A DNA stretch of 64,000 bases from Selaginella moellendorffii (Eukaryota > Plantae > Lycopodiophyta), in the NCBI RefSeq assembly GCF_000143415.4, contig NW_003314305.1:1566750-1630749 (forward strand), written 5' to 3'. Position 1 is the first letter of the stretch. The number at the start of each line of letters is the position of its first letter. The notes below the pieces were generated by a model that had not been told where the DNA came from, made no database searches, and saw nothing but the letters and a program-made list of their open reading frames with translations. Of the stretch, positions 1 through 33,598 are shown piece after piece. Made by a program: the position numbers and the translations under genes.

Positions 1-553
1 GTCGAGGCTCTCTTGTGTATAGATAAGTTCTGTTTCCACCAGCATCTATATACCGTCCTGAACACTCGTAGACACCTGTGCTGTCCAGCTCCTTGCTAAT
101 GACTGCGTGATAGATCCCATTTGCGTCTTCCGGAAACACGGAGAAGCAGTCCTTGGAGACGGCAGATTTCATCAACTGTATGGAGGCGTTGCCGACACTA
201 ACAGAACACTCGATTCTCGACAAGGAAATGTTACCGGAAACTGGCCTCTGACTGGAGTCGTTGTACTGTGTCACAATTCTCCACCACTTCGACAGTGTTG
301 GGAATTCAGAAGGCCCGTCGTCGGACAGAGATATGACGGCGCTGCGAACGGCTTCTTTGGAGTGCTCCGACCAGGGGCCAACCCAAGCAACATAGATCGT
401 GATAGGATCAACCATAAGCCTTCCCCCTTGGTATGCAAAACCGTTGCTACCAATAACAGATCGAATGGTGCTGCCAGAAGCCATCGATAAATTAGCAAGT
501 CCCACCCATAGCACTGAAAGCACAAGAGCTTCAAGCGGCATCTTAGCCATCAT
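1..553 (-). CDS. PHI-1/EXORDIUM-like secreted or membrane protein, paralogue of the 2124-4035 gene (5' part only; runs off the window)
   Basis: Manual translation of the minus strand from ATG 553 gives MMAKMPLEALVLSVLWVGLANLSMASGSTIRSVIGSNGFAYQGGRLMVDPITIYVAWVGPWSEHSKEAVRSAVISLSDDGPSEFPTLSKWWRIVTQYNDSSQRPVS. This is colinear with ORF 3157-4035 and has a hydrophobic signal peptide. Confidence 0.8.
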   Translation of the reverse strand, partial: MMAKMPLEALVLSVLWVGLANLSMASGSTIRSVIGSNGFAYQGGRLMVDPITIYVAWVGPWSEHSKEAVRSAVISLSDDGPSEFPTLSKWWRIVTQYNDSSQRPVSGNISLSRIECSVSVGNASIQLMKSAVSKDCFSVFPEDANGIYHAVISKELDSTGVYECSGRYIDAGGNRTYLYTREPR

Positions 554-844
554 ACCTCTTCGAGTTTCAAAAGCCTCCCTTCCTAGTCCTCATGTAAAAG
601 CCATGCCGTGTTACGATCAACACGATGGGCTCGCAGCAGTGTCCGAGCTCACCAATGTATAAATGTTTGTCACTGCAGCTTCATCTGCAAAATCTAGGTG
701 TTAACAAGGTAGAAGACAAGTTATGACGGGACAAACAGCCACGCAGAAAACAGAATGCAAACTTGTCGCATGCACAGAACGTCGATGAAACAAACCTTCA
801 GACCTTTCAAGCATGTGATTTCCTTAGGACACAAGCAAGGCAAA

Positions 845-2100
845 TTATCCAGTCAAAACGTTGGCCATACCAGTAAGAGAAATAAGTAAAGGATAGTTGT
901 GGTCTGCATCATAATTTAACCATTGCGTATTTTCGGCTTGCAAAAACTCCTTGTGCAGCTTGTAAATATCAGCATCATATACTTCCTTGACGGCAACAGC
1001 CAGACCAGCAGATTTTGCAATCTCAATAAATTTGAAAAGGCTTCCACCTCTGCAAGGACAGAAAAGTAGAGCCTCGGAAGTCATTGTACGTGTCAAAATC
1101 GATTTGATAGTATGCACCAGATCGAGATGAAAATCTTTGAAGTAAGTGCTAAGCCACAGAAAAAAAGCATCCATCAAATCCCATCTGTCATGAGGAACGT
1201 CTCTTACCAGTCAGCAGCAATAATAAAATCAAATTCAGAGTCCAGAGGTACTGGCTCTTTGCACCAGTACAAAACCTCTGAGCTGACTTTAGTCTTCCCA
1301 AACAGCTCCGCATTCAGTCTGCAATTTTTCTGGATATCTGCCAGGACGGAAGTCAAGGAGCCAAAAGAGAGGCGGCAAAAATATTATAGGATACAATTCA
1401 CAACCTTCGGGTTGCCATCCGTGATTAAAACTTCGGCAGCATCGGTACAAGCTGCCAATGCTAGTCCCGCTAATCCATATCCAGCACCAAGTTCTATAAT
1501 CCTCTTGTTCCTGTCAATCCAAACGCTACCCACAGATTGGAATTGGATGGAAAAAGAAATGGAAGAGCGAGATATCACGTACCTAAACATTTCCGGTCGT
1601 GAAACGCAATAGGAAGCAAGAATCTCTTCAGCTGGCCACAAACCTATGAAAAGCTTGTGATCTTCACTTAAGAAAAAGAATAGAAATCTCCACTTACAAA
1701 TAACACCAGTGTTGTCAATGCCGAGCTCTCTACAGCTCGAATGATCGCTAAGCTTAAACTGGCCGCTGCGTGATTGCCTACAGGAAGAAAATTCACCAAT
1801 GATAACAAAGAAAGCGATAAACCTCATCAGCAATGCAGTCGTCCGCTCATCCGGGAGCGTGTACTCCCACAGAATACCATCGATCTCCTCGTTATCTTCC
1901 ACGCAGCGGCTCGCGATCAGGCCAAAGCTCCCGGACGGGACTCTGGATACTCTCGCAGCCTCCTCGTCAATCTCATCTGCGGCATTGCAAGTCTGGACAA
2001 TGTGGGAGCCGATCCAGCTCAAGAACATACCAGATTTCGAGCGGAGCAGCGATCGCTTGAGAAGGCGCCATCGCAGAGCCGCGGGAGACGAAGCTGCCAT
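845..2100 (-). CDS. Calmodulin-lysine N-methyltransferase-like protein (7-beta-strand SAM methyltransferase), multi-exon
   Basis: N-terminal LRWRLLKRSL, GIDNTGVIC/LWPAEEILASYC, motif I IIELGAGYGLAGL, LITDGNPKVV, FDFIIAADCTYFKDFH and LLFCPCRGGSL, spread over ORFs 1384-2100 and 845-1177 with GT-AG introns. Confidence 0.85.
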
Positions 2101-2123
2101 TGTAAAACCCTAACGCTATTTGG

Positions 2124-4035
2124 TCAAATTAGAATGACATTACATGGATTTCTAGTAGTAGTTTCACTAGCAGTGGTTTTACTATAAGAGCGCCGGATCA
2201 AGCACGCTCCACAGAGCAAACACGAGAGTCCCATCAAGCACGACGCTCCAGAGATAATTGCGACCACGTTTCTCCTGGAAGATCGACGCTGCGACTCCGA
2301 TTCTGGATGATCCATCTCAAAGTTCGCGGCCCAGCCATCGCCATCACCGGTTTGGGTCGTGAAAACCAGCAACACTGGCCCGCTATACGTCCGGTTTGGA
2401 AGAATGGAGTAGCGTCCCGAGAAGCTTTCCAAGATGGAGCCCCGGAGCTTGTCGTTTCCTTGATAGACAGTGAGGACGTCTCGGCCTTGGATCGTGTCGA
2501 AACGAGTGACCTTTAGCCGGACTTCGGTGCCTTTTTTCGCGTTTAAGACCCACCTACACTCGCGCAAGCCCAAGTACTTCGATCCCTCGGGACTTCCATC
2601 CGATATAGAGCCCGATCGGGCGGAGGCCACAGTGGTTCCATTGCAGAATCCTGGAGGACGAAAAAAACAGAGCCTTTTTTCTTCTTCCAGAAGCAAAACT
2701 AGAAGATGATGTTCTTACCAGCTTTGTATTCGATCTCCCATCCCAGAGAACCAGCCGCTTGTTCGTCCGCGCTTGTTTTAAACTCGAGTATCAAGTTTGT
2801 GGGAACGAAGTCCGGAAGGACGATCCGAGAGCTAGCACCAGTCATGGATCTTAGCACCTCGCAACTATCAACTCGGCCGGAAGCACGCGGCAATATGGGA
2901 CACTCGTAGAAGTTGAGCTTGTCTGTGATGCTTAGAACCATGAAGTTCACGGTCACACGGAAGATCTTCGCTGTTGGAACGTCGAGGAGCCACAGGCAAT
3001 TCCTTGCAGGAGGATATGGTTGCAAGCCAACGCTGTGGTTGACGATCAAGCCCTCGCTTATCAGGCCTCTTGGCTTGTCAACCGGTTTGATGGAGTGGCA
3101 TTTTGCTGTACGAACAAGCAAACAACGTGAAATCATTCATGCATGCACACTCATGGTCACGACTTACCAATGATCTGGAGAGCACAATTGCTGTTCTCTA
3201 GGCTCCAAAGTTGCTGGATGAGGAACCGTGAGCCATTTATCCCGACCAAGTTCCAGCTCACGCCATTCTCCTCGATCACGGGACTGTTTCCATCGCTGAG
3301 TCCCGTTGGAGACGGACACAAGGAGCTGATAGTTCCTCCGGAATCGTCCTTCCAGCCGATCGTGTCGATGTTTGTAGCTCTCTCGGCGCTGCTGGCTAGA
3401 ACTCTGCTGATCAACGAGTCCAAACCTGTGTCACCATTCGGTGCCTCCGCAAGTCCTCCAAACCGACGCCATAAGTTACAGTACTCGTCTTCTCTCGGCT
3501 GCCGAGCAAAGAGATAAGTTCTTCCGCCACCATTCCCTTCAAATCTCCCAAAGCATTTGTAGACTCCCGTGCTGTCCAGATCGCTGCCGACGACCGCGTG
3601 ATATATCCCATTTGGGTCTTCCGGAAGAACATCGCTGCATTGCTTCGAGACGGTGGATTCTATCAGCTCGACTGAAGCGTTGGCGATACTGACATAGCAC
3701 TCGGTTGTCGACAAGGAGATCTTGCTAGAAACTGGCCTTTGGTTGGAGTCATTGTACTGCGTCGCGATTTTCCACCACCCGGACAAGGTCGGGAGCTCTG
3801 AAGGTCTGTGATCATCCGAGGAAGAAAGAGATCGGATGGCGTTGCGAAGAGCTTCCTTGGAGTTCTCCGACCAGGGGCCAACCCAAGTAACGTAGATCGT
3901 GATCGGATCAACCATGAGCCTTCCTCCATGATATGTTAGATTAGCATTGTCAGATCGAATTGAGCTGCCAAAAGCAATGGTATCAGTCGATAGAAGCACG
4001 AGTTCAAGTGTAAGGAATAGGGACTGGAGCAACAT
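2124..4035 (-). CDS. Signal peptide + PHI-1/EXORDIUM-like domain + 2 CUB domains + TM helix + short tail (exons 4035-3168, 3105-2719, 2650-2124)
   Basis: Exon 1 has EXO/PHI-1 hallmarks (LTYHGGRLM..ITIYVTWVGPW, WWKIATQY, APNGDTGLDSLIS, NLVGINGSRFLIQQLW..C). Exons 2 and 3 have CUB hallmarks (YPPARNCLWLLDVP; CNG..SGSISDGS..Y...RECRWVL..VRLKVTRFDT..DVLTVYQG..VLLVFTT..GWAANF), followed by TM VVAIISGASCLMGLSCLLCGACLI. Two phase-1 GTAAG..CAG introns join the exons in frame. Confidence 0.8.
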
Positions 4036-4559
4036 CTTACATCGAGTGGATCACTAGCCTCTTATAAAACCGATCTATCCCATTGTCACGCAACTCTGTC
4101 CGAGCTCGCCGATGTTAAATCTTTTGGCACACTATGGAAATGTTAGTTCATGATAAAGCTACAGCAATGAAAGAAACAAACTACAAACATAAAATCTTTA
4201 CGTGCCATATGTAAGCCGGCCACAATAACGAAAACATGTGAAGTTCTGAATTTTCGAAATCATCCAAGGTAAAAGCTCCAAACCTCTTTGTTTTTACATG
4301 GATGCTGTAGCACCTCAGTTATTGACACAACCAATTTGTCCATAAGAGATCTTTGCAAGAGATCGTCGCGATATGCTTGACGAAGGTTTCCATATTCTAC
4401 AAAGGAGATTAGTGGTTGTTGATTCTACCTACATTAATCAGCTCTTCTCAAGGTATAAGCTAAGTTCCGTGTGGATTAACTTCCCTATTCCAAGCCAAGG
4501 TTCTTATTCTCTGTGTGTATTGCAAGCTAGATCTCTAACGACAAGCAATTCTCTCCACC

Positions 4560-6250
4560 ACTAGACAAGCAATTCTTTGCCATCTCAGGAGGCACTCGAT
4601 TCGCATGCGGGCTTGCGTATGGTTCTCACTTCGCAATATGCTGAGTTCCAGATCTTTTAAAGAATGTAGGCTATGTAAGCTTGAGCTCCGGTGCCTATCA
4701 TGTCTGTGCGATTAGTAAAAACGACAATGGGGTTGAGTGCTGGGGGGCGATTGACGAGTTTCCAAGCTCTGAGCTAGAGTTTTTCTCGGTTTCATCCGGC
4801 CTCTTGTGTCTCTCAGGCAGGAGAGGTACATTGCTGGGGTGCTGTAGATCAAGCAACCATTCAATCAACCTCACAAGTTCGCGTCGGTGTCTGTGGGATC
4901 TCGTACGATATGCGGGTTGCCAAGCTTTGATTCGGCTTCTTCCATTGCTCCTCCAGGTTACAGGTTTTCTTACGTGACTGTACCATGTGTTGGTATTCGA
5001 GCGGACAATTACGGGGTGGTATGCTGGGGTCAGGATGGTCTAGCGCTCCTTCCGAAACTCAGTTTTCAGTGATTTCAGCAGGGCTGTTTGCTGGGGGAAC
5101 TCGGCTGACTAGTGAACCATTGCTAGACTTTGGTAGTGCTAGAATGTGCACAAGCGAGTGTGGGAAGAACCAGTTTAAGCTGAATTCTACGTTGAAGGTG
5201 TTGTCTCCATCGTTTTCAGACAAAGTTTGCTTGGAGTGTTCCACATGTGGGACTGGAAGTGTTCTAGACTCCAAGTGCGCAGGCTCGCCTCTTTTCCTAA
5301 AATATAAGAACTCCCAGGAGGAAGTTGTGAGGAAGAAGAAAACAATCACCAAGGTGGCAGTATATGTAACTGTTGCTATGTTCGTCTTTGGTGTCGTTCT
5401 CTTAGAAATTTGGTCTATGTTTGGCAAAGAAAGCCCAGCAGTGCAATGGAGATTAAAGCTGAAGTTAGTAGCAAGCATTTCAATGTCTTCAAACCAGCTC
5501 GAAGCAGCCACCAATAACTATAGCGAAGAGGTTCCTTTGGGACAGGATTCCTTGAAAATGGGCAGGAAGTTTCTATTTCTAAAAGGTAATTCACTATTCC
5601 TGTTTTTCCTCTTAAGATACTTGTAAACTCTTTGAAGAAACGTTTGTTTCCAGAAATCACCACTCTTGTCTAGTATAATTGGTGGAATTTTGCATTGAGG
5701 AAGTCTTTGAGGACGCTTTGTGACAATATGCTCATGTCCAACTGTCCGGCACCTTTCCAGTTATGGGACCAGGATGATAGCTGCACAGGTTGCGTGAGGC
5801 CTGCACAAGTAAGCATGGCCCAAGATCATTCATATGGACGTGAAATCAGCCTACATCTTCCTTAATAACGAATGGAATGCTCATGTGTCAAACTTTGGAC
5901 TATCGTTAGACGAACCTCAAGGCAAATCGGGTTACTTGGATCCCGAGTGCAATGGCTACTCCGTCAAACTGAGCATAAAGAGCGACGCGACAGCTTTGGA
6001 GTGGTTCTTCTGGAGCTACTTTCTGGCAAGGCAATAGAAAGTTTTATGCTGATCTTCAAAGATGGGCGATTGAGCTGGTCGAACAAGACGAGTGGAACTC
6101 GGTGCTGGATCCAAGACTTTCACTTCCTTTGGAACCGGAGCCTTTGTATCGGGCAGTAAAGTTGGCACTGGAGTGCGCGAAGATCAATGGAAAGGAGAGG
6201 CCATGCATGACAAGAGAGTGCAAAGTCTCTCGAGGATATCTTAGAATCCA
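4560..6250 (+). pseudogene. Decayed CRINKLY4/CCR-like receptor kinase
   Basis: RCC1-like crinkly repeats (SSGAYHVCAI..VECWG, SVGSRTICGL, VVCWG), a Cys-rich stretch, TM VAVYVTVAMFVFGVVLL, LEAATNNYSEE, and kinase remnants (HMDVKSAYIFL..AHVSNFGLS, GYLDPE, SFGVVLLELLSG). These are scattered over several frames with stops. Confidence 0.7.
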
Positions 6251-6409
6251 TGGTAATCACCACTGAGGTTCCACGCTCTAGAACCATTTTTTATAAAAAA
6301 AAAGTATATAATGCGATCACCAACCATCTTGTAAAAATCCCTCTTTTTTTCCCAGTTTGTACACTTCATTGTCGTGGATGTTTTGCTTGACAAGAGATCT
6401 TATATATGA

Positions 6410-9026
6410 TCAGTGGCGATGACTGTTGTTGGGGCACTGGTAGCACTTGGCAAAGATTCCAAAAGTTTTGATCTGGTGGACGAAGTTCACGGTGCTGGCC
6501 CAGCCCCCAAAACCGACGCCCACAACGAACACCCACACCACCACGAAAAAGTTGAAAACGTAGACTGCTGCCCAGCTCGGCATTATAAAAGGAGGCTTCT
6601 CCACGGCATTCTGTTTGACAAACAAAAAAAACCAAGGATCGATCCATCAGTCCTGATGTGAACACTAGAACACACGAAAAGGATGAACAGTAGCTAGCTA
6701 CAAGTTCGTAGATTCGTCCACGAGAGAAAGTGGAAAAGCATTTAAGTACGTACCTCTCGTGCAAAGGCAGTCCTGAAAGTGAGCATATGTGCGAGGCAAG
6801 GAATGATGTAGACTGTGAAGGTGACGAGTAGAGAGCCCACGGCGGAGTTTATAGGCCCGAAGAATGGGAATATGACTGCCATGAACCATATCGGGATCAC
6901 CACAGGGATCCGGGCAGCTGCTCGAAGTAGGAACCTTGGACTTCTATGGACGCCAATTATCTTCTCCCACACGAAGTACAAGGGCGTGCAAGCAAATCCA
7001 AACGTAATAAACTGCGAGACAATGGGAAGTTTAGCTCCAGGAACGAAGATCATAGATCATCGATGATCTTTCTTACCTGGTGGAGTAGCATGAGAACCAC
7101 GGCGAGGTCTCGGAAGACGTTCTTTGGAAGCAATGCCAGAGCGTTGCCGTTGTGGAGAAGCTCGTCGCCAAAAGCCCAATACACGGCTGTAGCAGATGGT
7201 ATTGTCAAGGTGAGCACATACAAGGTTGAGAAGAGGTAAACTGACTTAAACTTTGAAGGCTTCCACATAGCATGCATGATTTCTCTGCAAGAAAACCACA
7301 AACAACTTAGTTATATCATCTGGTCTTGCAAAAAGAAGTAAGAAAAAACTTGATTTGATCCGGAGGGGTATGATTTGATCTGAGCAGGAAGAACAGGAAA
7401 GAAAAAGGAGGGAATCGATGGAATGATATCGTAGGATCAAGCAAAGTGGTGCCGTGAGAATCATGATCGACTTACACAGTGACGGCATGGCCACCAAAGG
7501 TGTACAAGATGTTGGTGGCTCCAGTGAAATATTGGACGAGATTATTTGGGGCCGAATGCTTTACACCTGGGTCCTGCAAAAGTGAAGAAGTGTGAGAATT
7601 ATTCATGTTAGACCACGCCTATACAAGAAGTTTAAAATCTATCCTCTATCATCTCATGATGTAGCAAAGCAGCAAAAGAAAATGAAAGATAATTCTAGTT
7701 CTACAGCAAACTTTGACGAGACAAGCTTATCATCCAGTGGAGCTTTTTTAGATGCTTCTCTCACCTTGCCATGGACGAGAGCAGTAATTGTCATGTACCA
7801 AGCCGTGTAAGTTGTCATCCCAAGCCCCAGGAAGGACCAAATTCTATAGTTGTGGAACGATGGAACCAACACCGTTGTCATGCAACAAGCTCCAAAGATA
7901 ATCGTCCATGTCCGCTTGTCAAATCTATCGCTTATGTAGTATATGTTGCTGTAACGAAAGGGAGAAGATGTTAGTGCCAATGAAGAACCAACTTACTTCT
8001 CTCTTTTTTTCTTTTCCTTTTCTCGAGAACTTGAACTTGAGCTTACCTTCCACACGCAATGAGCTGAATCACCGAGCCAAAGAGAAGAAATGTACAGTTA
8101 AAAGTGAATCCAGCGGCCTTCCAGTATGGTCCCAAGAGACCATCGAGAACTTCGAACCACTGTCAAGAAAAAATATCACTCTTTTAGCAGCGAGAACAAA
8201 CTCTCGAAGTTCTAGCTACAGGAACTTTGGAAGAAGTCTTGGAGCTCTCAAAGTTCTACAGCTAAACTCTCCAAGCCTTCTCACAAACAGCCAGAAGAGA
8301 AGAAAAGAAAGAAGAAAAAAGTTTTAAACTTTAGCATAACTCTACCTGGATGACATGGTTCTTGAAGTTGACATTCTCTTTTTCCTTGCGAGCCCGATAC
8401 TCGACATAGAGGCAGCTGATAAGATAGGCAGTCCAGGAGCCCAAAAGCCCGTAAAACACTTGGAAGGTGACCCCCCACACAATGCCCAGCTGCGAGAAAG
8501 AGTATGGCAGCGTCAAAAGCACCTGTGCGACCTGTGGAGAAGAAAAGAGAAAAACAAGTAAGTTCCGACAAACAACGAAGGAAGAAGAAGAACGAAGGTT
8601 TCTTTTTGACAGAAAGTGGAGGAATCGAAGCAAAGGCGAGGAAGCTATAGAAGAACAACAAGAAAGGAGTGATCTTTGGTTTTTGCTATACGGAAGCAAA
8701 GGCGGGGAAGCTATGGAAGAACAACAAGAAAGGAGTGATCTTTGGTTTTTATACTGCGAGTGGAAGGAATCGAAGCAAAGGCGGGGAAGCTATGCAAGAA
8801 GAGCAAGAAAGGAGTGGTCTTTTGAGCTCTCACTACTCACCTGGTTGGAGGCGCAGCTAAACCAAGCATCGTAGACGGATCCACCGTGCCAGAGGAGCTT
8901 CTTGGCGAGAGCTCGCATGGAGTTATCCACAAGCCCATCTTGTTCTTGCCGGTCCTTCTCCACCTCGGTGTAGCTATTGTTCTCGCCGGTGTGCGTCGCC
9001 AGAGCCACCAGCGATTGGAGACCCAT
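6410..9026 (-). CDS. LAX: AUX1/LAX auxin influx carrier, multi-exon
   Basis: LWHGGSVYDAWFSCASNQVAQVLLTLPYSFSQLG, NFKNHVIQWFEVLDGLLG, DKRTWTIIFGACCMTTV..PSFHNYRIWSFLGLGMTTYTAWY, EIMHAMWKPSKFK, PFFGPINSAVGSLLV and GFGGWAS..FGIFAKCYQC. Confidence 0.96.
8614..8826. repeat. Three imperfect ~65-75 bp tandem copies within LAX intron 1
   Basis: GAAGCAAAGGCG(A/G)GGAAGCTAT..AAGAA...CAAGAAAGGAGTG recurs at about 8627, 8693 and 8773. Confidence 0.8.
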
Positions 9027-11138
9027 GTCTAGAAATCTATGACGACTGCTGCAAATCTCTACGAGCTAGAACAAGTGTACTCTAGGAGCAAAGAAGAGAC
9101 CTTCCCACATTGTGATCCTCGGTGTCGAGCGAGGATGCTCTATTGGGCTGTTCGATCGAGCGAAGAGGGAAAGCAAAAACTCATCTTTGTGGCTTTCCGG
9201 GGTGTTGAGAGAAGCATAGGAGCGAGCTCCGAGCGATGGAGCTCCTCGAGGAGATAATGAGAGATGAGGAGCTATAGTTTGATCTCGATCGATTGATTCT
9301 TGGGAGGACGAGAAAAGAGGGATGGATCGGCTAGATGGGAAGAGTGAAAGAATGTATTTTCTATGGAAGTAGCATAGGATAGCTATAGCCTATAACCCCG
9401 TTCTCTCCATCTCTCTCCATAGCTCTTCTCTCTCTTTTCTTCTTCCCTGAGAATAAAAGACAAAGACGAGGCAGATGAGAAACGCCATGACGAGGTCTCT
9501 TTCCATCTCGCTCAACTCGGATTGGACCAGGAAAAGAGAGAGAGAGAGAAAAAAAAAACCACTGTCAAAACGAGGAGCTTTTGTTCTCTTTTTCCTCTGG
9601 AAAAAGCTGATAAGAAATATGCGTATTTCTCCACAATTTCTTCCTCGTTGGATTTGGATATGATACACAGCTTGGTCGTCCAAGCTTGTTCTTTTGCTTG
9701 TGATGATAGGTACTTTTATACAGCTCCAGCAATACCCACCTACTGTCTACTATCGATCAATCAATACGAGAAACAGCAACACTTCACCAAACTAAGCATA
9801 GAGTTCTCCAAAACTTTTGATCTTTCCATTCCCTCCATCTCATGCTTAGCGATTTGCACGACCACTGTCCTTTTTCCTCCAATAAAAACCATGCCAGTGG
9901 CTACATTTACTACAGTCCTCTCTTCTTTTGGCTTTCATTGAGATACGAAATAAACTCCCGAGTCGGACGGGGCGATCAAGCTCATAAGATCGCCCAAAAC
10001 CATAGCTTAAGTGGTCTCGTCCGTACAGTCTAGAAATTTCTATGACCACGTTGTCTCGAGAGAGGTGCCAAAAGCTGATGCTTGCTTTGCTTTGCTTGTC
10101 TCTTACGAATGATCCCACTGATTCATCCCAGCTCGCATGGAACGTAACCCCATGGCTGTACGGAAAGACGAATTTTCTCTCCAGGAGGGAGGGGGTGGGG
10201 CCTCACTCACAAGTGAACGAGAATTCTTTTTTTTTTCCTGTACCAACATTGGAATCGCAACGTATAGTCGGGAAAGTTTCTCGGCCAGCGGTGGAAAACA
10301 ACATAAAACAATGGAGAGGTTCTCCTTTCTATCTTCCGGAATCTCTGCCGTACAGGGGCTTGTTGTTGGCCATTCATTCTCTTCCTCGTGGCCCCGATTG
10401 ATTGTACTGCGGGCGGTATGGACCATGTGGCCCATATGCTCATGATTGTGAGCATGGCCGCATGCACCATTGTCACATTCCTTCTCGAGATTTTTGTGAC
10501 AATTTCTAACTATATAAAAGGTCCTTTCCTTATTAACAAAAGTTTGACTAAAATTAAAAGTTCAAAGTATTCAGATTACAATATCTAAAATATAAATTGT
10601 CTTCAATTTAGATGAGTAATATTATTTACTATGATGCATGGTAGTATGGTGATTATGATAGTTGTAATGGAATGTGAAAGAGTGAAATAAATTGATAGAA
10701 ATTTAAAAATATAAAAATATAATAATGATGGAAAAGTTATATTCTATCATGAAAAAAATACCAAATATGAAAATTTTATTTAATTAAAATATGATAAATA
10801 AAAATAATTTTAACTCAACTAAAAAAAGAGTATATTAAAGGTGGGGCATGATCTTTCATATAAAGCTCTACATTCTTTGAATCACCAAGTATTCCTCCAA
10901 GTACCTTCCCACCTAAAATTAAAAATAATACTTTGAGAGTTTTAATAGTTGAAATTTCAAGTATTTATTTTATAAATTAAAATTTGTTTCCATTATTATT
11001 ATTGTTACTAATAAAATTGAACTTGATTTTGATTAAAAGCTTAAAGGAATATGTAATTAGCATATACATATAATTTTATAATTTTATTGTTTTAGTATAA
11101 TAAATTTTACAAATACTAATATTTTAAAACATTAATTG

Positions 11139-11241
<103 letters not shown>

Positions 11242-12585
11242 ATAGTAAAAATAAAATATTTATTCACTTTCAAATAAGATATTTCCCCAAATCGACAATC
11301 TATATGCTTTAGTACTATAATTGTGTATTACGTAGGCAATATACATATATGTATTTACAAACTTTATAGTATTTATTTATATATATATGTGAGGGCCAAG
11401 TGTACGGCTACGATACCGTATATTAATATTAGCGTAGTGGGATTTTGGTAGCTGTCGGATTGGTTTCAATCTGGACCACTCACTCTTGTATATAAACTAG
11501 GGTTTTTGGGTTAATTGATATGCACATTTTCTGTATTCCCCTTCCATATTCCAAGCACTCACATTGGTGGAGATGAGGGGCACCTTTGATTATCCCTAAG
11601 GAGTGCTTGAATTTGGGATTTTAGTTTAGATTTAGCTTTTGCATTGTCTAGATCTAGCTTTTTCCATTTCCTTTCTTTTTCTTCCCTTTCAGGATGTTGG
11701 TTTAGATTTAGCTTTTTGCATTGTCTAGATCTCTCATTTCCTTTTTGTTTTTTGTCGTTTCTCTTCGTTTGCTCTTTCTTCGTTTATCTTCATGGCAGAT
11801 CAGCAATCTCCTCCTTTGACTCTAGAGCAGCAGTTGGTCCAATTGCTTGATGCTATGCGCTTGCAATTGAACAACCAAACTCAATTGATAGCGGCATTCA
11901 CGGCACGTGGTTCAACTCCTCTTGCTCTTGGTGCCAATCTTCGTGTTCGGCCGGAGTTCTTTCGTGGGAATCCTGGGGATGATGTGTACCATTGGTTCGA
12001 TCACTTCACGGTGATTGCCACATATCATTCTTGGGATGATGCTCGACATTTGCGTGAGTTTCCCACGTGTCTCCAAGGGACGGCGTTGCAGTGGTACAAT
12101 GGATTGAGTGCGGCCACTCGTGGGGATTGGAGTCTTCTTCCGGACGTCTTCAAACGCGCCTTCGGACATGCCGACGATTGTGACGATTCCTTCCAACAAT
12201 TGCATCGTCTTAGCCAAGGGCCATCTGAGTCAGTGATGCAATTTGGCGTTCGTTTCCGAAGTCTTTTGCTTCATGCAGAGCCTAATATGTTGGAGTGGAT
12301 CAAGCTAGGAATGTTGTGGCCAGCACTTCGTCAAGATCTTGTCGGCCTTGTGCATGCACTTGCTCCTGCCACCCTTGACGATGCTCTTCGCTTGGCACAA
12401 CGTTATGAAACATTGCCTCTTCCACTTCTTGCTGCACGTCCTTCCGCTCCACTTCCTATGAGTGATGGTCCTGTTCCAATGGAGGTTGATGCTGCTGCTA
12501 CTCGAGTCCAAGGACAAGGGAGAGGACGTGGTCGTGGCCGTGATGTTTGTTGCTGGGCGTGTGATGAAGTTGGTCATACTTATCG

Positions 12586-13152
12586 TGTGAGACACAAAAT
12601 CCCTAGGCCCCAAAGTGGAGCCGGAAGGGCGCCACGTGGTAGTGGCCGAAGCGAGAGCCAAACGAGCGTAACACGTTTGGACCAAAAGCTCCGACTTGAA
12701 AAGTCAAGAGCGGGAGTGGAACTCCCAACGAAGTGCTCGAGGAACGAGCACGAAGCGAGCAAAAAGCGAGGCTCCAAAAAGGGACCCGAGATGGACCCGA
12801 GATGGAGTCCGAGATGGAGTCTGAGATGGAGTCCGAGGTGGACCCGAGATGGAGTCCGAGATGGAGTCCGAGATGGAGTCTGAGATGGAGTCCGAGATGG
12901 AGTCCGAGGTGGACCCGAGATGGACCCGAAATGGAGTCCGAGATGGAGTCCGAGGTGGACCCGAGATGGACCCGAGATGGAGTCCGAGATGGAGTCCGAG
13001 ATGGAGTCCGAGGTGGACCCGAGATGGACCCGAAATGGAGTCCGAGATGGAGTCCGAGGTGGACCTGAGATGGACCTGAAATGGAGTCCGAGATGGAGTC
13101 CGAGATGGACCCGAGATGGAGTCCGAGATGGACCCGAGATGGAGTCTGAAGT

Positions 13153-24695: not shown

Positions 24696-25433
24696 TCATA
24701 TGGCCAGAATGATGCTGGAGACGATCAAGAAGCTAGACATACTGGAAAATATGAAAATGAAAGAGGAGCTTCGGATAGTCTCCGCAAGCCAACTTCGGGT
24801 CCTGCCTGAGCATTTACGTGGAGGCCCACCACACAGCCCTGGATTGCTGGCAAAGAACCTAGACGAAAAGTTCCGGCCAAAACTCGTGAAAGATGACGGA
24901 ATTGTCCCAGTGAACTGGTTGAAGGAGACGTCAAACTTGGTGAGCCGGGGAAGAACTCCAATCTGTCCGGGAATGGGTCCCAAGAATCTGTTGTGGCTCA
25001 AGTCGAGATTGTTGAGAAAGGTGCAATTGTTAAAGGAAGTCTCAACAGATCCCGAGAAGGAATTGTTGTGGACGTCAAAGCTGATGAGGTATGGAATGCC
25101 GCAAATGTTGGAGGGAATGGTGCCGTTGAGCTTATTATGTGAGAGGTCGAGAAACGCGAGGTTGGAGCACTTGTCCAGGCCTCGAGGAAATCCACCCGTG
25201 AGCCCGAGCCCTGGCAGATCGATTTTATACACGACCTCATGGAAGCAATCGATCCCGGCGAACTTGCAGATGCTAAACGTCGGTGGGAAGATCCACGAGT
25301 CGAGGAAGTGCATGGGATCCCTGATCGAGCTCTTGAACTCTTTGAGACACTCGACATCGCTCTGGCAAGAAATTACCCCGAGGAGCAGCGCGATGACGAG
25401 CATGCTCGATAATCCGGCCCTGGCCGCCTCCAT
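24696..25433 (-). CDS. BIR-like LRR ectodomain protein without kinase, hydrophobic C-terminus (inverted copy)
   Basis: Signal peptide MEAARAGLSSMLVIALLLGVISC, SDVECLKEFKSS, ICKFAGIDC, about 4-5 LRRs, FASNPGLCG, and the ending FIFIFSSMSSFLIVSSIILAI*. Confidence 0.85.
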   Translation of the reverse strand: MEAARAGLSSMLVIALLLGVISCQSDVECLKEFKSSIRDPMHFLDSWIFPPTFSICKFAGIDCFHEVVYKIDLPGLGLTGGFPRGLDKCSNLAFLDLSHNKLNGTIPSNICGIPYLISFDVHNNSFSGSVETSFNNCTFLNNLDLSHNRFLGPIPGQIGVLPRLTKFDVSFNQFTGTIPSSFTSFGRNFSSRFFASNPGLCGGPPRKCSGRTRSWLAETIRSSSFIFIFSSMSSFLIVSSIILAI

Positions 25434-28352
25434 CGCCGCGAGATTCCAGGAGCTCGACCGATATTTCGAGGCGCTCGACACACCTTGATTTCTAGCGGGA
25501 CCGCAGCAGCTCGCAATCCTATCCCGCTCGCCTCTCCCGAAAGCCCTAGCCCTGCCGCCTTCTCTCCCTTTGCATTATCCTAGCGTGTGCTCTCATAGCC
25601 AATTCCATGAAAAATGCGCACCGACGGCCTAGATTGCGTTCTTCGGTCAAGGCTAGGAATCACTGTATTTCGACCTGCGGAATCACCCCAATGCTTTCTA
25701 GCATGTGTTCTGGTCCGCCATAGCCACCGATTGCGTACTTCGGTCAAAACCGGGAATTCAACGCGTGGAATATTGAAAAAATTCTACTTGATTTTTTTGT
25801 CTAATGTTTAGACCTCCACGGCAACATCAACTGAAGGTGAGGACTTGCTCTGGGCGCCCGGACACTAGAATTCTTTGGAATTTGAGGACTTGCTCTGGAC
25901 GTGCGGACGCGCGAGGCAGCTGGATGGATTGCGCGGACCATGGATCTCGGTTGGGCTGCTCGGATCTCATTGCTGGATCTGAGGGAGAATGCGCTTGAAG
26001 TCGATTCTCGAAAGTTTGGCGTCTCTATCGGATTCAATCTCTGTTCTGCTTCCCGCTTCGATTTCTTGGATTTTCTAGCGGCTGGGCCGAGTGTGTTGAG
26101 ACTAAAGTGTTCTCTAGGTGGCAATGGAGATTGAAAAGAATACCCAGGTAATCTTCTCTCCCCTTGGAGAATTATCTTCACGCTACTGCCAAAGGTATGA
26201 TCTGAGCTCTCGTTCCATTTTTCAAGTTTAAAAGTTCCTTGGGTGGCTTTCACCACATCTCCACGGCTATGACTTCTTCATCATCAGGCAAGGCTTTGGA
26301 AACTATAAGAAAAAGTATGAAGCCAACTTCAACCTTGGTATACACACTATTTATGTTGCAAGGATGCATTTTCTACCAGCTGAGCTATCTTCCAGGTAAG
26401 CAACTCTTGCATTCTAAACTCCCTCAACAAATTTGTGGCGTAAATCACAAATTTGTATAGTGGTGATTATTACTTTCAGCACTATATAATTCTATATAAC
26501 CTGATCATCTATACATATTCTGAATGGTGGTCAGGTTTCTTTTATGTTATCTCATGTTGCCAGCTTCACAACATCTACACTGGGATTGTGTTTTTCTTTT
26601 GGATGATCTACATTGTTCCGAGGTCAAGTCTTTGCGTGCACTTTTATGTATATATGCTTATATGAATTCCTATGGCAGCAACAGGAGTATGCCTGCTCAA
26701 AGCTTCTAAGGCAAAAAACAGTGCAGAATTATGAATTGACCAGAAAGCCGCGGGAGACTGGGGATGCCCGACCTCGAGTCCAAGCTTGGGCCTGACCTGG
26801 TCCAGATCGTACAAATAAGAATTCTAGCAAAAGTTTCAGTAAATTTCTAGCAAAACTTCTCTATTAGAAATTTTAATTGATTTTTCCAAACTCGAATTCA
26901 CAGTGGCAGTTCTCCCACTATCCAAAAATTTGACTGTAGTGCAAAGTTACAATTTGTAACGTCTCCAGCAAGCTCTGCTTTTTGGTGTGAAACTTCACTC
27001 CAGCTCTAGATGGCGATGCCATGCCATCTACCACCCTCACCATTTCTTAACGCCCAATGCCAACGTAGTCACAACACAATTCAATAGAATGGATGCTCAC
27101 AAATAGAGGATGAAATTGTATACTTAATTAAATTTGAGTATGAACAAGCTTGAAAATAAATATATTTAGTTAAAAATGCCTGAAAGCTATGAATTTTTTT
27201 ATTGATATGAAACTATGCTACAATCATCTAGACATTGCCAAGAATCATAAGCACAGCTCTGATCTCATTCGTTCGTTATTAGCTTGATTGCAGTACCACA
27301 TTCAGAAGGCATGTCACCTGGATCGATCAAGAGTTTGCTCTTTAAGATGCCGTGACTAAAGCTTCCATCTCCGTACTGGAGGGAGCTATGTAGGCTGTCG
27401 AGTTCGTGGCTCAGCTACTCCTATTCTTGCCTTCTTTGTTGTGGTCCCTGTGGATCAAACTCGAAGCCCCAGCCGGGGTCGCTGCATTGATACTATGCTA
27501 GATCGCACCGGAGGCGATCGGGTAGATCCATGGAATGGCAGTGACATGAAAGCGCTTGCGCTGTAATCGAGAAGCACGTCCAGAGCACCGTTGAGGAGGT
27601 AACAGGTCCCAAGCCGCTCCAGGATTACGAGCCGGTAGAGCAGATCGGGAGGTCCGGCCCTTGTGTGGACGCTCATAATCCCGATGTTCTAGATAACTAG
27701 CACATCCTGTCAGGGGAGACGAGGCAGGGTTGGAATCACCAAGGCAGTCCTGGCCCTGGACGAGAGGAAGACTGCAATGGTGACAGAGCCATAAGTGACT
27801 TTGTAACGGCTAAAGTTAAACAGTTAAAAAGAAGAAAAGAATGTTTTGTTCCAGGAATCGCTGGGGAGGGAGCTAGTACCCGAGAAGACCGGCTTCGTGC
27901 CTATGGAGCAGCCTCTAGGCTGGCGAGGACGAGGCGAAGAATCCATTTATGAATCCTCTCAGATATGATCCAAGACAATGTTTCCAAGCACAAAGACGAC
28001 TTACAAAAATTTCTTAGAGTAGCGCTCAACTCAGTGCGGTCAATCGCAAGCAAACTGGAAGGTTTGTCTGGGTCATTCGTGCTGATGACTCTAGTCATAA
28101 CGAATGGCTGAAAAGCTACGAAAAAGTCTCACTGAATTCGACCGAGAAGATTTTGATCAAAACGTTTCAGGTCATCTTCAATCTGTTACACTGTGATCCT
28201 CTTTCGCAAGGTAGCAGACAACTTTAAATCAGCTGCATGTCTCTAATCCTATCAGGGCGCTAGAAAGCCCGGCTAGGTAAAACGTAGAATTCCTCATTTC
28301 TACGACCTTTGTGTTTGAACAAATAGACAAACAGAATCAGAATTCTAATCTT

Positions 28353-28460
28353 CGCGCTTCCGCACGCCCAGAGCAAGTCCTCAAATTCCAAAGAAGTCTA
28401 GTGTCCGCGCGCCCAGAGCAAGTAGACAAAAAATCAAGTAGAATTTTTTCAATATTCCAG
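28353..28460. repeat. Inverted copy of ~25767-25908
   Basis: CCAGAGCAAGTCCTCAAATTCCAAAGAA..TAGTGTCC and AAAATCAAGTAGAATTTTTTCAATATTCC are reverse complements of sequence upstream of the 25433 gene. Confidence 0.85.
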
Positions 28461-31400
28461 GCAAGACTATTGTCATATATTTGCCAAGATTTGCTTTAAA
28501 TACTCTAAATAGGAACTTTACATATGGGTCTATAGTAATCCCAAATGCCCATCCATATATATACTAGTCTTGAGTTCAAATTTCATGACTAAAGGTTTGG
28601 GGTTCACTTCTAACTATGGTCATTAATAATGAATATACTCCTCAGTAAATACAGAAAGATAATTAAAAGTTGTATCAAATTGAATTTATTTTCTCTATTA
28701 TTTTAGTATTAATAATTTTATCATCTCCCTGAGAAGTATGTTCACAAATATGATTGCTAAGAGAATACCTAAGCAACTCGACTAAAAAATAAGGTTTGTA
28801 GTATTAATACTTTGAGTTAAGTATGATAGCAACCTCAAACTCTTGCTCACAAACAAAAACATTTAGAGGAGGTGATGGTGGAATACGAGTTTGATTAAAA
28901 AGGGCATAAAGTTTTAATAAAAAATATAGAACACGAAATATTTATTATAGGGTGTGTGGTTTTTAAATAATGACAAACTTAAACATTTGATCCAATTAAA
29001 TAAAAAGGATTAGGTTGGCAAGAATGATAAACAATATGGCAATAAATAGCTTGAGCATGAAAAAGGTGATGATAAATTTCTTTATTAAAAAAATCTAAGA
29101 CAGTTGCATAAGCAATAAATTCATTTATAAGATCAAATGCTGAAGGAAATAAATATGACCAATGAAGGTGAATGCCATAAAAGATGAAAAATAAAAATGA
29201 TGTGCTAAAGAGTGTTAAGAATTATTATAAATAAATTCATTTGTAGGAAGGAAATTAACCCAATCATCTTGTTTATGAAAAATAAAGCATCAAAGATATT
29301 ACTCAAAACTTTGAATAGTATACTCTAATTTCCTATTACTTTAAGGATGTTAAAAAGTTAATTTGTTTTCTATATAAAGGAAAGAAAAAAACTAGTGCCA
29401 GAATTCAACCTAGTATTATGTAAACACAAAGACACTTAACCTCAACTATCCCAAGACCCTCAATTAATTATAAAATAAGGTGCATTTTTATTAATAAGAC
29501 TTTTCCTTTTCCATGTAAACTTTTACGAAACATTTCTTGAATTGTTCTTTTTAGTTTTTTATAATTTACCATGCCTTTATGAATGAAAGATGAGAATCAC
29601 AACTCTCCCAAGATGTTAATCTCAACATGTGGTATGATTTTTTAAACAAAATTAAACCTAGGACCCCTATGATAATATTGAGTGAAATCTGAATATATGG
29701 TATGATTCTTTTATTCAATCCCAATGATGTTTAGACCTAAGAGCCTTATAATAATTATTGAATTTTGTGGTCACCTAGCCCAGTAATATTTATACCCAAA
29801 CCTTCTATAATAATATTTAATAACATCTCAACATATGGTGTGTTTCATTCACCAACCAACAAAATCAAACCCAAAACCCCTATGATAATATTTAGCTTTT
29901 AAATTTTGAGGTCACCTAACTCAATACTATTTAAACCCAAGGATATTTAAATTTAAAACCCTTAACTCTTGAATTTTGAAGGCACATTATTCAAATTCAA
30001 TGATGTTTAACCTTAAGTATTTCAATTCCTCCACTTTTTTTTATAGGCCTTTTATTTTATATTTAAATCTTTATGAATCGTCTCTCAGGTCATTCTCTTT
30101 AGTTATTTACAATAAAAATAAATTGAGGCCTTTAATCATTAACAACATTATATAGCAATTTATAAAGGTGAAAAATCTTCTTATAAATAAGCTCAACCAG
30201 TTAGTCTCCATTAATTCTATTGTAACATAGCAAGAATTTATTTCCTTACTAATCTTTCATATTTTTGTGGATTTGACAATATTCTTATTATGGCCAATTG
30301 ATTTTCCAAAATAATATATTCAAAGACCCTAAAGCAAGAAAGTACAAAATAAGACAAATATTTTCTCTTTGGAGAAGACAAAATAAAGCATATTAAGGCA
30401 ATTTGGTTCATTGATGCATATTGTAAGTATGAATAAAGTGTTCAATATACTTGTGCATATAGGGCTAACAAAATTATCATTAGATCATTTCTAATGCTTT
30501 GTAGATATTAAAATGTTATAATATGTATACTTGGATAATACACAATTTAAATGAAGATGCAAGATAATTGTATTGAGTAAGAGCATTAACCTCCCATTTT
30601 CTTTCCTTAGACAATTTATATTGATAACTAGAAACAAAATAGTGATTGTGACTATTAAGCCTTAACACCCATTAAGGATGTGTGCCAAAGACTAATATTT
30701 ATAAATACTGGTCACATTAAGAAAACTTTTAAGGAAATAACTCCAAGCTTTAAAAGGGTTGTACCCTTTTAAAGTATTGCAAGTAGCACAAATTTACTTT
30801 CAATTTGCTTTCAACAAATTGCAAGTAGCACTTTGTTGAAAATATTATAATTGATCTTTGAAGCCAAACTTAGTTAAGAAAGTCATGAAACTCAGACCCA
30901 TGCTATCAAACTTTGTTGTCATACCAATATTTAGCTTTAAACTAAGAAGCTATTGTTAATGCTAATTTATTACACCTACAAGTGAAGTGTTATATTGAAT
31001 ATTCTGGTTTGATTATTATAAAGTATTGAGATCTGATTGAAAACTGTTGATATTAGATGTTCAAACTATCAATAGCTCATTGAGAGAAAGGGAGACAACA
31101 AAACAACAAATAAAATGGAGGAGAAAAGATTAAGTTTTAATGCCCTTTTAAAAGTATGGTTTTTAGGATTTATACTTATTTTGGTAATTAATAAAAAAAT
31201 CCTAATCTTGATATGGGTTCATCTTGAGTTTAAATCACATAAGTAGAAGTTTGGGGTTCACTTCATACTATGAATAGTAGTAATAAATATACTCCTTAAA
31301 TAAATACAAAAAGATAGCAAATAGATGACACTCCACACTACCTGAGTAGAGAGTGAGAATCAGCTGTAGACACTATAGATAAAGACAATAATAAAAGGAG

Positions 31401-32376
31401 TCTTAATCTTTAGATAAAATATTACATATTATATTGTTGCTTTACTTATTATCTAAATATCTTAATATAATATAATACTTTTATTATGATTTAAAAATTA
31501 TGTTGTTATAAATATTATATGTATATTTTTTATTTGAAAATATTAATTTATTTATAAGGTTTTCTTTTGTAAACATTAAAAGTTATAAACTAATATTATA
31601 ATTTTCATCTAGGAAATCCTTATTGCGTAATTTATTAATAAAAATATTTCATTCAATTTCACAAATTATTGTCTTCTCACAATAATCAATAAATATCTTC
31701 TAAAAATCAAACTCATAATTGTCCAATAAATCAAACTTAGACTCCACTTCAGTGAAGGATCTTCCTTCACTAGCAAAATACTTGGCTTTAGTCCTTGCAT
31801 TGATATCACTAGGATATAATAATTACAGGAGCAACACTATAATATTTTAGCATGTTTAATGAGGACAATAAAATAACATCTAAAGCCTTAATGAACAACA
31901 ACATGACAAAGACGACAAACAGGTATGACCAATTGTCACTATGGCATATTTGATCTGCCGGTCTCATGCTGCAAGACCTTGTAAATAGTATGAATGAATG
32001 AATGAAAATATATTGTAATAAAAGCTAACAAGAATGTCTTCCAGATCTAGCAGCTTATAAGAATAAATTATTTGATTGACTTTGTTTAAAGACTGGAGCA
32101 GCAAGGATTAAGGACGCTACGGGATGAGGGGCTGGAAGCTGTCGAGGAGGAGGAGGCTTTAGTTGGGCTTTAAAACAATCATCCTTAGCGTGCTATCAAC
32201 GCTCTTCACTCTGAATGTGGAATTCAACCCGAACATACACAGCATAAATATTAAACTCAATTGTAGAGCTCCAGTAGTAAAAACAACAGGAACAACCCTT
32301 ACAAATGGTCTCCTTGAAATATGTTATTAAGAGGTACTGCTACGGTTTTTAAAATCTCGAAATTTGAAATTCCCCT

Positions 32377-33126: not shown

Positions 33127-33598
33127 TAGTCAACACGAACTTGATTATGAAATTGTCTCTCTTTGTTTAAAAATTTGAACTCCAATCAACGATCCATATT
33201 TAAAGTCCCCAGTCTCACAGTCAAGAAAAGTCAACACAACACCACCAGGGAGGATCATGGCGGAACGATCACGGCGCTCCCGCCTTTTTGACCAGACAGA
33301 GTTTTCCAAAGACTTTGCTACGTGAGATCCACGCCGTTGAAAATTGCGCAACACCTGCCGTGGATTCCTAGCCTTGACCGAAGAACGCAATCTAGGCCGT
33401 CCGTGCGCATTTTTCATGGAATTGGCTATGGCGGCCCCAGAGCACACGCTAGGATAATGCAAAGGGAGAGAAGGCGGCAGGGCTAGGGCTTTAGGGAGAG
33501 GCGAGCGGGATAGGATTGCGAGCTGCTGCGGTCCCGCTAGAAATCAAGGTGTGTCGAGCGCCTCGAAATATCGGTCGAGCTCCTGGAATCTCGCGGCG

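What the first reader, a model, noticed from the sequence alone, without database searches (positions are those of the whole stretch)
2124..4035. PHI-1/EXORDIUM-CUB-CUB-TM: an unusual plant cell-surface protein architecture
Seen: three exons joined by phase-1 introns at the domain boundaries. They encode a signal peptide, an EXO/PHI-1-like domain, two CUB-like domains, a Cys-rich TM and a ~22-aa tail. Established: EXORDIUM/PHI-1 proteins are normally stand-alone secreted proteins, and CUB domains are mainly animal extracellular modules that are very rare in land plants. Inference: this is an exon-shuffled, membrane-tethered EXO receptor-like or adhesion protein that I do not recognise from seed plants.
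Basis: partly seen in the sequence, partly recalled or inferred. Interest (0 to 1): 0.85.

Follow-up and report, generated by a model that had tools for sequence, protein, structure and literature searches.

The report
Kinase-less EXORDIUM-CUB-CUB membrane receptor gene
This Selaginella gene really does encode a membrane-anchored protein with an EXORDIUM-like domain and two CUB domains, but it is a kinase-less copy of a little-studied receptor family that also occurs in flowering plants, and no RNA from it was seen.

Summary
On the minus strand, three exons (4035-3168, 3105-2719, 2650-2124) are joined by two GT-AG phase-1 introns. They encode a hydrophobic N-terminus, a Phi_1/EXORDIUM domain (Pfam E 4e-25), CUB1, CUB2 (34 bits, above Pfam's cut-off), one Cys-rich transmembrane helix and a 23-residue tail. 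CUB1 scores weakly in Pfam, but a profile comparison and a predicted fold both confirm it.

The interpretation needs correcting. The window is Selaginella moellendorffii scaffold GL377609.1. The gene lies beside three EXO-CUB-CUB-TM-pseudokinase genes. A yam (Dioscorea) protein has the same architecture, and one survey of plant receptor kinases already counts "CUB/Phi_1". This scan had also described the family on another piece of this genome.

What is new here is the missing kinase. Homology to the sister gene runs to about eight codons before the stop, and a methyltransferase gene starts 24 bp later.

The copy looks maintained:
- dN/dS against its sister is 0.20.
- Its rate to an outgroup equals the sister's.
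- The second haplotype carries an intact allele.

However, three RNA-seq runs gave no reads, and neither haplotype's listed gene calls include it. My reading is a receptor-like protein acting as co-receptor or decoy. Function is inferred.

The parts
3168..4035 (-). Exon 1: start codon at 4035-4033, hydrophobic signal-like N-terminus (about 4035-3970), and a Phi_1/EXORDIUM domain with 6 conserved Cys. It ends in phase 1.
   Evidence: Pfam Phi_1 E 4.1e-25. 67-71% identity to sister P0018. Hydropathy, sequons and Cys positions.
3106..3167 (-). Intron 1 (62 nt, GT..AG, phase 1), between the Phi_1 domain and CUB1.
   Evidence: Read directly from the sequence. The splice sites are kept in the second haplotype. 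No RNA junction reads.
2719..3105 (-). Exon 2: CUB1 domain, 129 codons, a symmetric phase 1-1 exon with 4 Cys.
   Evidence: Pfam CUB E 0.028, below the cut-off. hhalign against the CUB2 profile gives 90% and E 1.6e-6. PDB sequence hits are all CUB proteins. The AF2 model (pLDDT 78) matches solved CUB domains.
2651..2718 (-). Intron 2 (68 nt, GT..AG, phase 1), between CUB1 and CUB2.
   Evidence: Sequence. Splice sites kept in the second haplotype.
2313..2650 (-). Exon 3, first part: CUB2 domain.
   Evidence: Pfam CUB 34.3 bits against a cut-off of 21.4. 366 hits at E<=1e-10, many to multi-CUB proteins. PDB cubilin 5.6e-15.
2196..2267 (-). Transmembrane helix (24 residues, 4 Cys).
   Evidence: The only window with KD19 >= 1.6; maximum 2.23.
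2124..2195 (-). 23-residue cytoplasmic tail and TGA stop (2126-2124). There is no kinase domain.
   Evidence: Translation. Protein homology to P0018 ends at its residue 540, window 2148. DNA homology ends at 2268. The only kinase-like sequence in the window is at 35654-36544, in another gene.
617..2100 (-). Context: an expressed Methyltransf_16 gene. Its ATG (2100-2098) lies 24 bp after the stop of the EXO-CUB-CUB-TM gene.
   Evidence: Pfam Methyltransf_16. Eight CT..AC RNA-seq joints and depth of roughly 1-4.
1..553 (-). Context: start of the sister gene (P0018), which encodes EXO-CUB-CUB-TM-pseudokinase. The rest of it lies left of the window.
   Evidence: tblastn 100% identity to P0018 residues 1-138. 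Locus L001 gene list.

Best explanation
This is an intact, selectively maintained gene for a type I membrane receptor-like protein. The protein has a signal-like N-terminus, an EXORDIUM/Phi_1 domain, two CUB domains, one Cys-rich transmembrane helix and a 23-residue tail.

It arose as a truncated duplicate of the adjacent EXO-CUB-CUB-TM-pseudokinase receptor genes and lacks their whole intracellular kinase-like domain.

Shown: the architecture, its kinship with the neighbouring receptors, the loss of the kinase region, purifying selection, and an intact second allele.

Inferred: it sits in the plasma membrane and binds the same still-unknown apoplastic ligand or partner as its sisters, through the EXO and CUB modules. 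Having no signalling domain, it would act as a co-receptor or decoy that modulates the sister pseudokinase receptors, or whatever active kinase those receptors recruit. This would resemble kinase-less RLPs beside plant RLKs, or the CUB co-receptors neuropilin and Kremen in animals.
For: Domains. Single TM, sequons and paired Cys.

Sister genes with the same three-exon layout plus a kinase-like domain. These sisters lack the catalytic Asp (H-G/R/L-H/S/N replaces HRD) and the DFG Asp (GFG in all four).

Loss of the kinase: protein homology to P0018 runs to its residue 540 and stops 24 nt before the stop codon. The next gene's ATG follows 24 bp after the stop.

Selection:
- dN/dS against P0018 is 0.20 over 576 codons, with dS 1.26.
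- dN to the outgroup P0154 is equal for both copies (0.622 against 0.619), so this copy's branch is not accelerated.
- About 45 stop codons would be expected under neutrality at that divergence, and none is present.
- The second haplotype (GL377567.1) has an intact allele with the same splice sites and stop position, one in-frame 6-bp deletion, and 11 nonsynonymous against 9 synonymous differences (pN/pS 0.38, one-sided p 0.03).
Against: There were no RNA-seq reads on 2172-4175 in three runs (about 1.4 Gb read from each). The flanking methyltransferase and the sister's exon 1 had depth of roughly 0.3-9 across bins in the same runs.

No gene is listed at this position among the called genes returned for either haplotype's record, and the unspliced exon-1 ORF is not on record either.

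The stop lies 24 bp before the neighbour's ATG, and the last bin with neighbour reads (2005-2171) reaches past the stop at 2124. A 3' UTR of this gene would therefore have to overlap that gene.

The date of the truncation is unknown. Constraint measured over the whole history cannot exclude a recent loss of function.

The N-terminal hydrophobic region contains a Glu and is two residues shorter in the other allele, and it was not tested with a signal-peptide predictor.

No ligand is known for any EXO domain. The Phi_1 model was too poor to help (pLDDT 50).
Confidence: 0.6

Rival explanations
1. It is a silent truncated relic. A partial duplicate of an EXO-CUB-CUB receptor gene lost its kinase and its 3' end, is no longer transcribed, and simply has not yet decayed.
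For: There were zero reads in three RNA-seq runs while the neighbours were covered. It is not among the called genes returned for either haplotype. The stop abuts the next gene's start, leaving no separate 3' UTR. DNA homology to the sister ends at the TM segment.
Against: The 593-codon frame is open and the splice sites are canonical in both haplotypes. dN/dS is 0.20 with no rate acceleration against the outgroup. About 45 stops would be expected if it had been neutral since the duplication. Allelic pN/pS is 0.38. Three samples from one study cannot show silence.
Confidence: 0.22
2. The three-exon model is wrong. The locus makes only a secreted stand-alone EXO protein (exon 1 read into intron 1, stopping at 3157-3159), and the CUB exons are not part of the product.
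For: The unspliced ORF 4035-3157 is open for 292 codons. No junction reads exist to prove splicing.
Against: Exons 2 and 3 are open, in phase, bounded by canonical sites and under the same constraint as exon 1 (per-exon dN/dS 0.19, 0.20, 0.21). The sister genes use the same three-exon layout. No gene with the 292-residue product is on record.
Confidence: 0.08
3. It works on its own as a membrane-tethered EXO effector or wall-membrane adhesion protein, independent of the sister receptors.
For: Stand-alone EXO is an extracellular protein needed for cell expansion (PMC3691544 abstract). CUB domains are binding modules in many solved proteins.
Against: The same ectodomain is fused to a kinase-like domain in Selaginella and in a monocot, which points to a receptor setting. 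Nothing here shows adhesion.
Confidence: 0.1

Closest known systems
Selaginella moellendorffii EXO-CUB-CUB-TM-pseudokinase genes next door: P0018 (814 aa model), LOC112349981 (P0154, 907 aa) and LOC9661189 (P0120, 894 aa)
   Same: The ectodomain has the same order (Phi_1, CUB, CUB), the same conserved Cys and the same three-exon layout with introns at the domain borders, followed by a single TM. Identity to P0018 is 67% in exon 1, 55% in exon 2 and 59% in exon 3.
   Different: Those genes carry about 270 residues of kinase-like domain in the same third exon. This gene stops 23 residues after the TM and is followed by an unrelated methyltransferase gene.
CUB/Phi_1 class of plant receptor-like kinases counted in the metaRLK survey (bioRxiv 10.1101/2023.12.21.572927), for example Dioscorea zingiberensis J5N97_014330 (P0155)
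   Same: The ectodomain combination is the same, and the family reaches flowering plants.
   Different: The survey lists kinase-bearing proteins only and gives no function. This copy has no kinase, so such surveys would not record it.
EXORDIUM / EXL / PHI-1 proteins (PF04674)
   Same: Phi_1 domain match at E 4e-25, with an extracellular setting (PMC3691544).
   Different: From established knowledge, those are stand-alone secreted proteins of about 300 residues. Here the domain is the N-terminal module of a membrane protein with two CUB domains.
Animal CUB co-receptors with short tails (neuropilin, Kremen)
   Same: They are type I membrane proteins whose CUB domains bind ligands or partners, with no catalytic intracellular domain. 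Their CUB domains are the best fold matches of exon 2.
   Different: There is no common descent of the whole protein, and their other domains differ. In the alignment to cubilin, the plant family lacks the 'LE' segment and has Gln or Lys where many CUBs have an Asp. From my memory of the Ca-binding triad, the classical Ca2+ site is therefore probably absent. This is an inference.
Plant receptor-like proteins derived from RLK ectodomains (from general knowledge, for example TMM, CLV2, CEBiP)
   Same: An ectodomain homologous to receptor kinases, plus a TM and a short tail, expected to act with kinase-bearing partners.
   Different: A different ectodomain class (EXO-CUB-CUB rather than LRR or LysM). 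Its full-length relatives are themselves predicted pseudokinases.

Membership tests
EXO-CUB-CUB receptor (pseudo)kinase family (CUB/Phi_1 RLKs) | N-terminal Phi_1/EXORDIUM domain | tested here: met
   Pfam PF04674 E 4.1e-25. Aligns with P0018, P0154, P0120 and P0155 with 47 invariant columns.
EXO-CUB-CUB receptor (pseudo)kinase family (CUB/Phi_1 RLKs) | Two CUB domains after the Phi_1 domain | tested here: met
   CUB2 scores 34.3 bits, above the cut-off. CUB1 is confirmed by hhalign at 90%, by PDB hits and by the predicted fold.
EXO-CUB-CUB receptor (pseudo)kinase family (CUB/Phi_1 RLKs) | Single transmembrane helix after CUB2 | tested here: met
   One hydrophobic window only, KD19 2.23.
EXO-CUB-CUB receptor (pseudo)kinase family (CUB/Phi_1 RLKs) | Intracellular protein-kinase-like domain | tested here: not met
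   The stop comes 23 residues after the TM. No kinase similarity lies downstream. The only kinase hit in the window is at 35654-36544.
Stand-alone EXORDIUM/PHI-1 secreted proteins | Phi_1 domain as the whole mature protein, with no membrane anchor | tested here: not met
   The Phi_1 exon is spliced in phase to two CUB exons and a TM. The splicing itself is not shown by RNA.
CUB domain (PF00431) | Sequence match above the curated cut-off and the CUB beta-sandwich fold | tested here: met
   CUB2 passes the cut-off. CUB1 is below it, but its fold matches MASP-1, C1r, neuropilin, Kremen and spermadhesin CUBs at Foldseek probability 1.00.
CUB domain (PF00431) | Acidic Ca2+-binding residues found in many ligand-binding CUBs | tested here: inconclusive
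   The alignment to cubilin shows a gap at the 'LE' segment and Gln/Lys at an Asp position. The identity of the triad is from memory and was not checked on a structure.
Plant receptor-like proteins (kinase-less RLK relatives) | Ectodomain homologous to RLKs, one TM, and a short tail without a catalytic domain | tested here: met
Plant receptor-like proteins (kinase-less RLK relatives) | Expressed and located at the cell surface | tested here: inconclusive
   There were 0 reads in three RNA-seq runs. Localisation cannot be tested here.

The most novel reading that the evidence does not exclude
The EXO-CUB-CUB family is an old land-plant receptor system in which an EXORDIUM domain, so far known only as an orphan secreted growth factor-like protein, is the sensing module of a membrane receptor. 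This kinase-less copy would be its dedicated co-receptor or decoy. If so, it gives the first receptor context for EXO signalling and a plant counterpart of animal CUB co-receptors.
Probability: 0.3. Interest if true: 0.65.

Novelty: new variant of a known kind. Interest (0 to 1): 0.45.

Why it matters
The biochemical function of EXORDIUM proteins is still unknown, and CUB domains are rare in plants. A receptor family that joins the two is a direct route to finding what EXO domains bind. It is conserved from a lycophyte to a monocot, and its kinase domain is predicted to be inactive.

The kinase-less copy described here shows that the family also produces receptor-like proteins, which kinase-based surveys cannot see. 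The gene is absent from the listed gene calls of both haplotypes, so it may be an annotation gap.

The gain over what this scan and one survey have already recorded is modest. This is a new variant of the family, not a new kind of system.

Tried and rejected
- Word-indexed homologue searches were swamped. P0018 whole gave only lectin kinases. The ectodomain profile A2 returned only its own first sequence. Only the P0120 ectodomain search was useful. A census of the family, or of kinase-less members in other plants, was therefore not possible.
- The Phi_1 exon folded poorly with a five-sequence alignment (pLDDT 49.9). Its fold search gave only generic alpha/beta matches with Z <= 7.3. The Phi_1 profile has no relative among solved structures. 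Nothing about mechanism was learned from this.
- The sequencing run X1, which holds part of the gene, gives one 799-nt contig inside exon 1 and the 5' flank (3314-4112). Its library type is unknown, so it says nothing about splicing.
- A fusion of this gene with the downstream methyltransferase was rejected. There is a stop between them, the methyltransferase ATG is in another frame, and no joint links them.
- A hidden kinase exon was rejected. There is no kinase similarity nearer than 35.6 kb, and that hit lies on the opposite strand in another gene.
- Literature searches for EXORDIUM with 'CUB domain', for the two Pfam accessions, and for 'CUB domain' with Selaginella found nothing relevant. 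The 'CUB' in the last set is the copper-B site of polyphenol oxidases.
- The first Atlas search, with the ectodomain alone, gave no cluster by features.

Full report
**Where the window comes from.** Window 1-10415 is 100% identical to the reverse of locus L001. L001 is Selaginella moellendorffii scaffold GL377609.1 of assembly GCA_000143415.2, positions 1554611-1577164. A window position w corresponds to L001 position 10416 - w.

**The observation.** The minus strand reads as a three-exon gene.
- Exon 1 is 4035-3168. It is followed by GTAAGT, and intron 1 ends in AG at 3107/3106.
- Exon 2 is 3105-2719. It is followed by GTAAGA, and intron 2 ends in AG at 2652/2651.
- Exon 3 is 2650-2124 and ends in TGA.
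- Exon lengths are 868, 387 and 527 nt, so both introns are phase 1 and exon 2 is a symmetric 1-1 exon. The product has 593 residues.

**Domains.**
- Exon 1 matches Pfam Phi_1 at E 4.1e-25.
- Exon 3 matches CUB at 34.3 bits, above the 21.4 cut-off. In a search of 1.84 billion representative proteins it hit 366 at E<=1e-10, many of them multi-CUB. The ones I scanned carried strong CUB matches. Its family profile hits cubilin, enteropeptidase, PCPE-1 and MASPs in the PDB.
- Exon 2 is only a weak Pfam CUB hit (E 0.028), so it was tested three further ways. The family profile of exon 2 against that of exon 3 gives hhalign probability 90% and E 1.6e-6 over 110 columns. The same profile hits only CUB proteins in the PDB, with cubilin at 7.5e-8. 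An AlphaFold2 model (pLDDT 78, pTM 0.74, eight strands) matches solved CUB domains of Kremen, PCPE-1, neuropilin, MASP-1, C1r, TSG-6 and spermadhesins at Foldseek probability 1.00.

**Topology.** Hydropathy shows one segment of transmembrane strength, residues 129-152 of exon 3, with four Cys, followed by a 23-residue tail. There is a moderately hydrophobic N-terminus, seven N-glycosylation sequons, and 6, 4 and 2 Cys in the three ectodomain modules.

**What the gene belongs to.** The closest protein in the representative library is P0018 (59% identity to exon 3). Pfam finds Phi_1, CUB and a kinase domain in it.
- P0018 is the next gene to the left. Its first exon occupies window 1-553.
- Further left lie two more genes of the same kind: P0154 (LOC112349981) and a 94% match to P0120 (LOC9661189).
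- In two of the sisters (P0018 and P0154) tblastn shows the same three exons, and in them the third exon runs on from CUB2 through the TM into about 270 residues of kinase-like domain. The third sister aligned as a single stretch, so its introns were not resolved.
- Aligned to a solved lectin receptor kinase, P0120 has H-G-H where the kinase has HRD, and GFG where it has DFG. The four family members all have GFG, and none has the catalytic Asp. They are predicted pseudokinases.

**Occurrence outside Selaginella.** The family is not confined to lycophytes.
- Dioscorea zingiberensis J5N97_014330 (P0155) has Phi_1, two CUB stretches and a kinase-like domain.
- A protein-atlas cluster of 66 Streptophyta proteins carries Phi_1 with a kinase.
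- A survey of 524,948 receptor-like kinases from 528 plant genomes states that CUB/Phi_1 is the only combination of 'potential' ectodomains among the 20 most populated multi-domain combinations (bioRxiv 10.1101/2023.12.21.572927). I found no functional study.
- This scan had already noted the array, and a follow-up on another piece of this genome had described the family. I used those notes as leads and re-derived the points above.

**What is particular to this copy.** It has no kinase.
- Protein homology to P0018 runs to that protein's residue 540, at window 2148.
- DNA homology (70% over 1733 nt, bridging the short introns) ends at 2268, where the TM segment starts.
- The stop is at 2126-2124. 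The ATG of an unrelated Methyltransf_16 gene follows at 2100-2098, in another frame.
- The only kinase-like sequence elsewhere in the window is at 35654-36544 on the other strand.

By architecture the gene therefore encodes a receptor-like protein derived from a receptor pseudokinase.

**Is it alive?**

Evidence for:
- Nei-Gojobori estimates, computed exon by exon, give dN/dS of 0.19, 0.20 and 0.21 against P0018. The overall value is 0.20, with dS 1.26 and dN 0.255 over 576 codons.
- The dN distances to the outgroup P0154 are 0.622 for this gene and 0.619 for P0018. The nonsynonymous branch lengths are therefore equal (about 0.13 each), and this copy has not evolved faster than its kinase-bearing sister.
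- At half the pairwise dS, about 45 stop-creating changes would be expected in a neutral sequence of this length. None is present.
- The second haplotype in the assembly (GL377567.1, locus L002) aligns at 98.4% over 4.6 kb. It carries an intact allele with both splice-site pairs kept, the stop at the same place (TGA to TAA), one in-frame 6-bp deletion in the N-terminal hydrophobic region, and 11 nonsynonymous against 9 synonymous differences. This gives pN/pS 0.38, one-sided binomial p 0.03.

Evidence against:
- In three RNA-seq runs of this species (about 12% of each read), not one read fell on 2172-4175. The methyltransferase gene and the sister's exon 1 had depth of roughly 0.3 to 9 across bins, and eight spliced joints were seen.
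- The gene is not among the called genes listed for either haplotype's record, and the unspliced exon-1 ORF is not on record as a product.
- The gene has no room for a 3' UTR of its own.
- The date of the truncation cannot be fixed, so a recent death cannot be excluded.

**Mechanism.** Only the parts list is shown; the rest is inference. EXO is an extracellular protein required for cell expansion (PMC3691544), and its ligand is unknown. CUB domains are binding modules.

In the alignment to cubilin, the plant CUB2 family lacks the 'LE' segment and has Gln or Lys at an Asp position. From my memory of the Ca-binding triad, the classical Ca2+ site is therefore probably missing. This is weakly supported.

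The sisters are predicted pseudokinases, so the family probably signals by recruiting other kinases. A copy that keeps a constrained ectodomain and TM but has no intracellular domain would most simply act as a co-receptor, or as a decoy competing for ligand or partners. I put 0.6 on 'functional receptor-like protein of this kind', about 0.2 on 'silent relic', and the rest on a wrong gene model or an independent role.

**Verdict.** This is a new variant (kinase-less) of a family that has been recorded but never studied, and the interest is moderate.

Noticed in passing
window 470-871 (minus strand): RNA-seq joints 871->684 and 556->470 link the last coding exons of the Methyltransf_16 gene to exon 1 of the next EXO-CUB receptor gene (P0018). 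By my own reading, the methyltransferase stop is near 617. The skipped piece 471-555 contains that receptor gene's likely start codons (553-551 and 550-548) and its signal-peptide coding. The annotated P0018 model begins at an internal Met (415-413) with no signal peptide. This is either read-through transcription or a mis-annotated 5' end.
   Followed up: partly
window 2098-2171: The methyltransferase start codon lies 24 bp after the stop of the EXO-CUB-CUB-TM gene. The last RNA bin with reads (2005-2171) reaches past that stop, so the neighbour's transcript start may lie within the EXO-CUB gene's last exon. The two genes are packed very tightly, head to tail.
   Followed up: partly
window 4681-6159 (+ strand): ORF pieces resemble a CRINKLY4/RCC1-repeat-type receptor kinase (weak RCC1_2 hit, a TM-like stretch, a kinase-like motif). 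They are split over several frames, have no reads on the part that was laid (up to 5000), and are not among the listed gene calls. This may be an unannotated gene or a pseudogene.
   Followed up: no
proteins P0145, P0149, P0062, P0121: Some of the stronger non-plant matches of the plant CUB2 (about 30-36% identity) are Bacteroidota-type secreted proteins with Por_Secre_tail (type IX secretion) and several CUB domains. This was confirmed for four scanned hits only; the top-ranked long multi-CUB proteins were not scanned and their source is unknown. The origin of the plant CUB was not examined.
   Followed up: no
window 35654-36544 (+ strand): A kinase-like region (23-32% identity to the family's kinase domains) belongs to another receptor gene. 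An earlier first-reader note calls the 24696-36646 region a BIR-like kinase with kinase-less ectodomain paralogues. If that is right, it would be a second case of kinase loss in this window.
   Followed up: no
window 11792-12883 (+ strand): A 363-codon ORF contains a C-x2-C-x4-H motif and a repetitive Arg/Trp-rich tail. It may be retrotransposon gag-like. Not tested.
   Followed up: no
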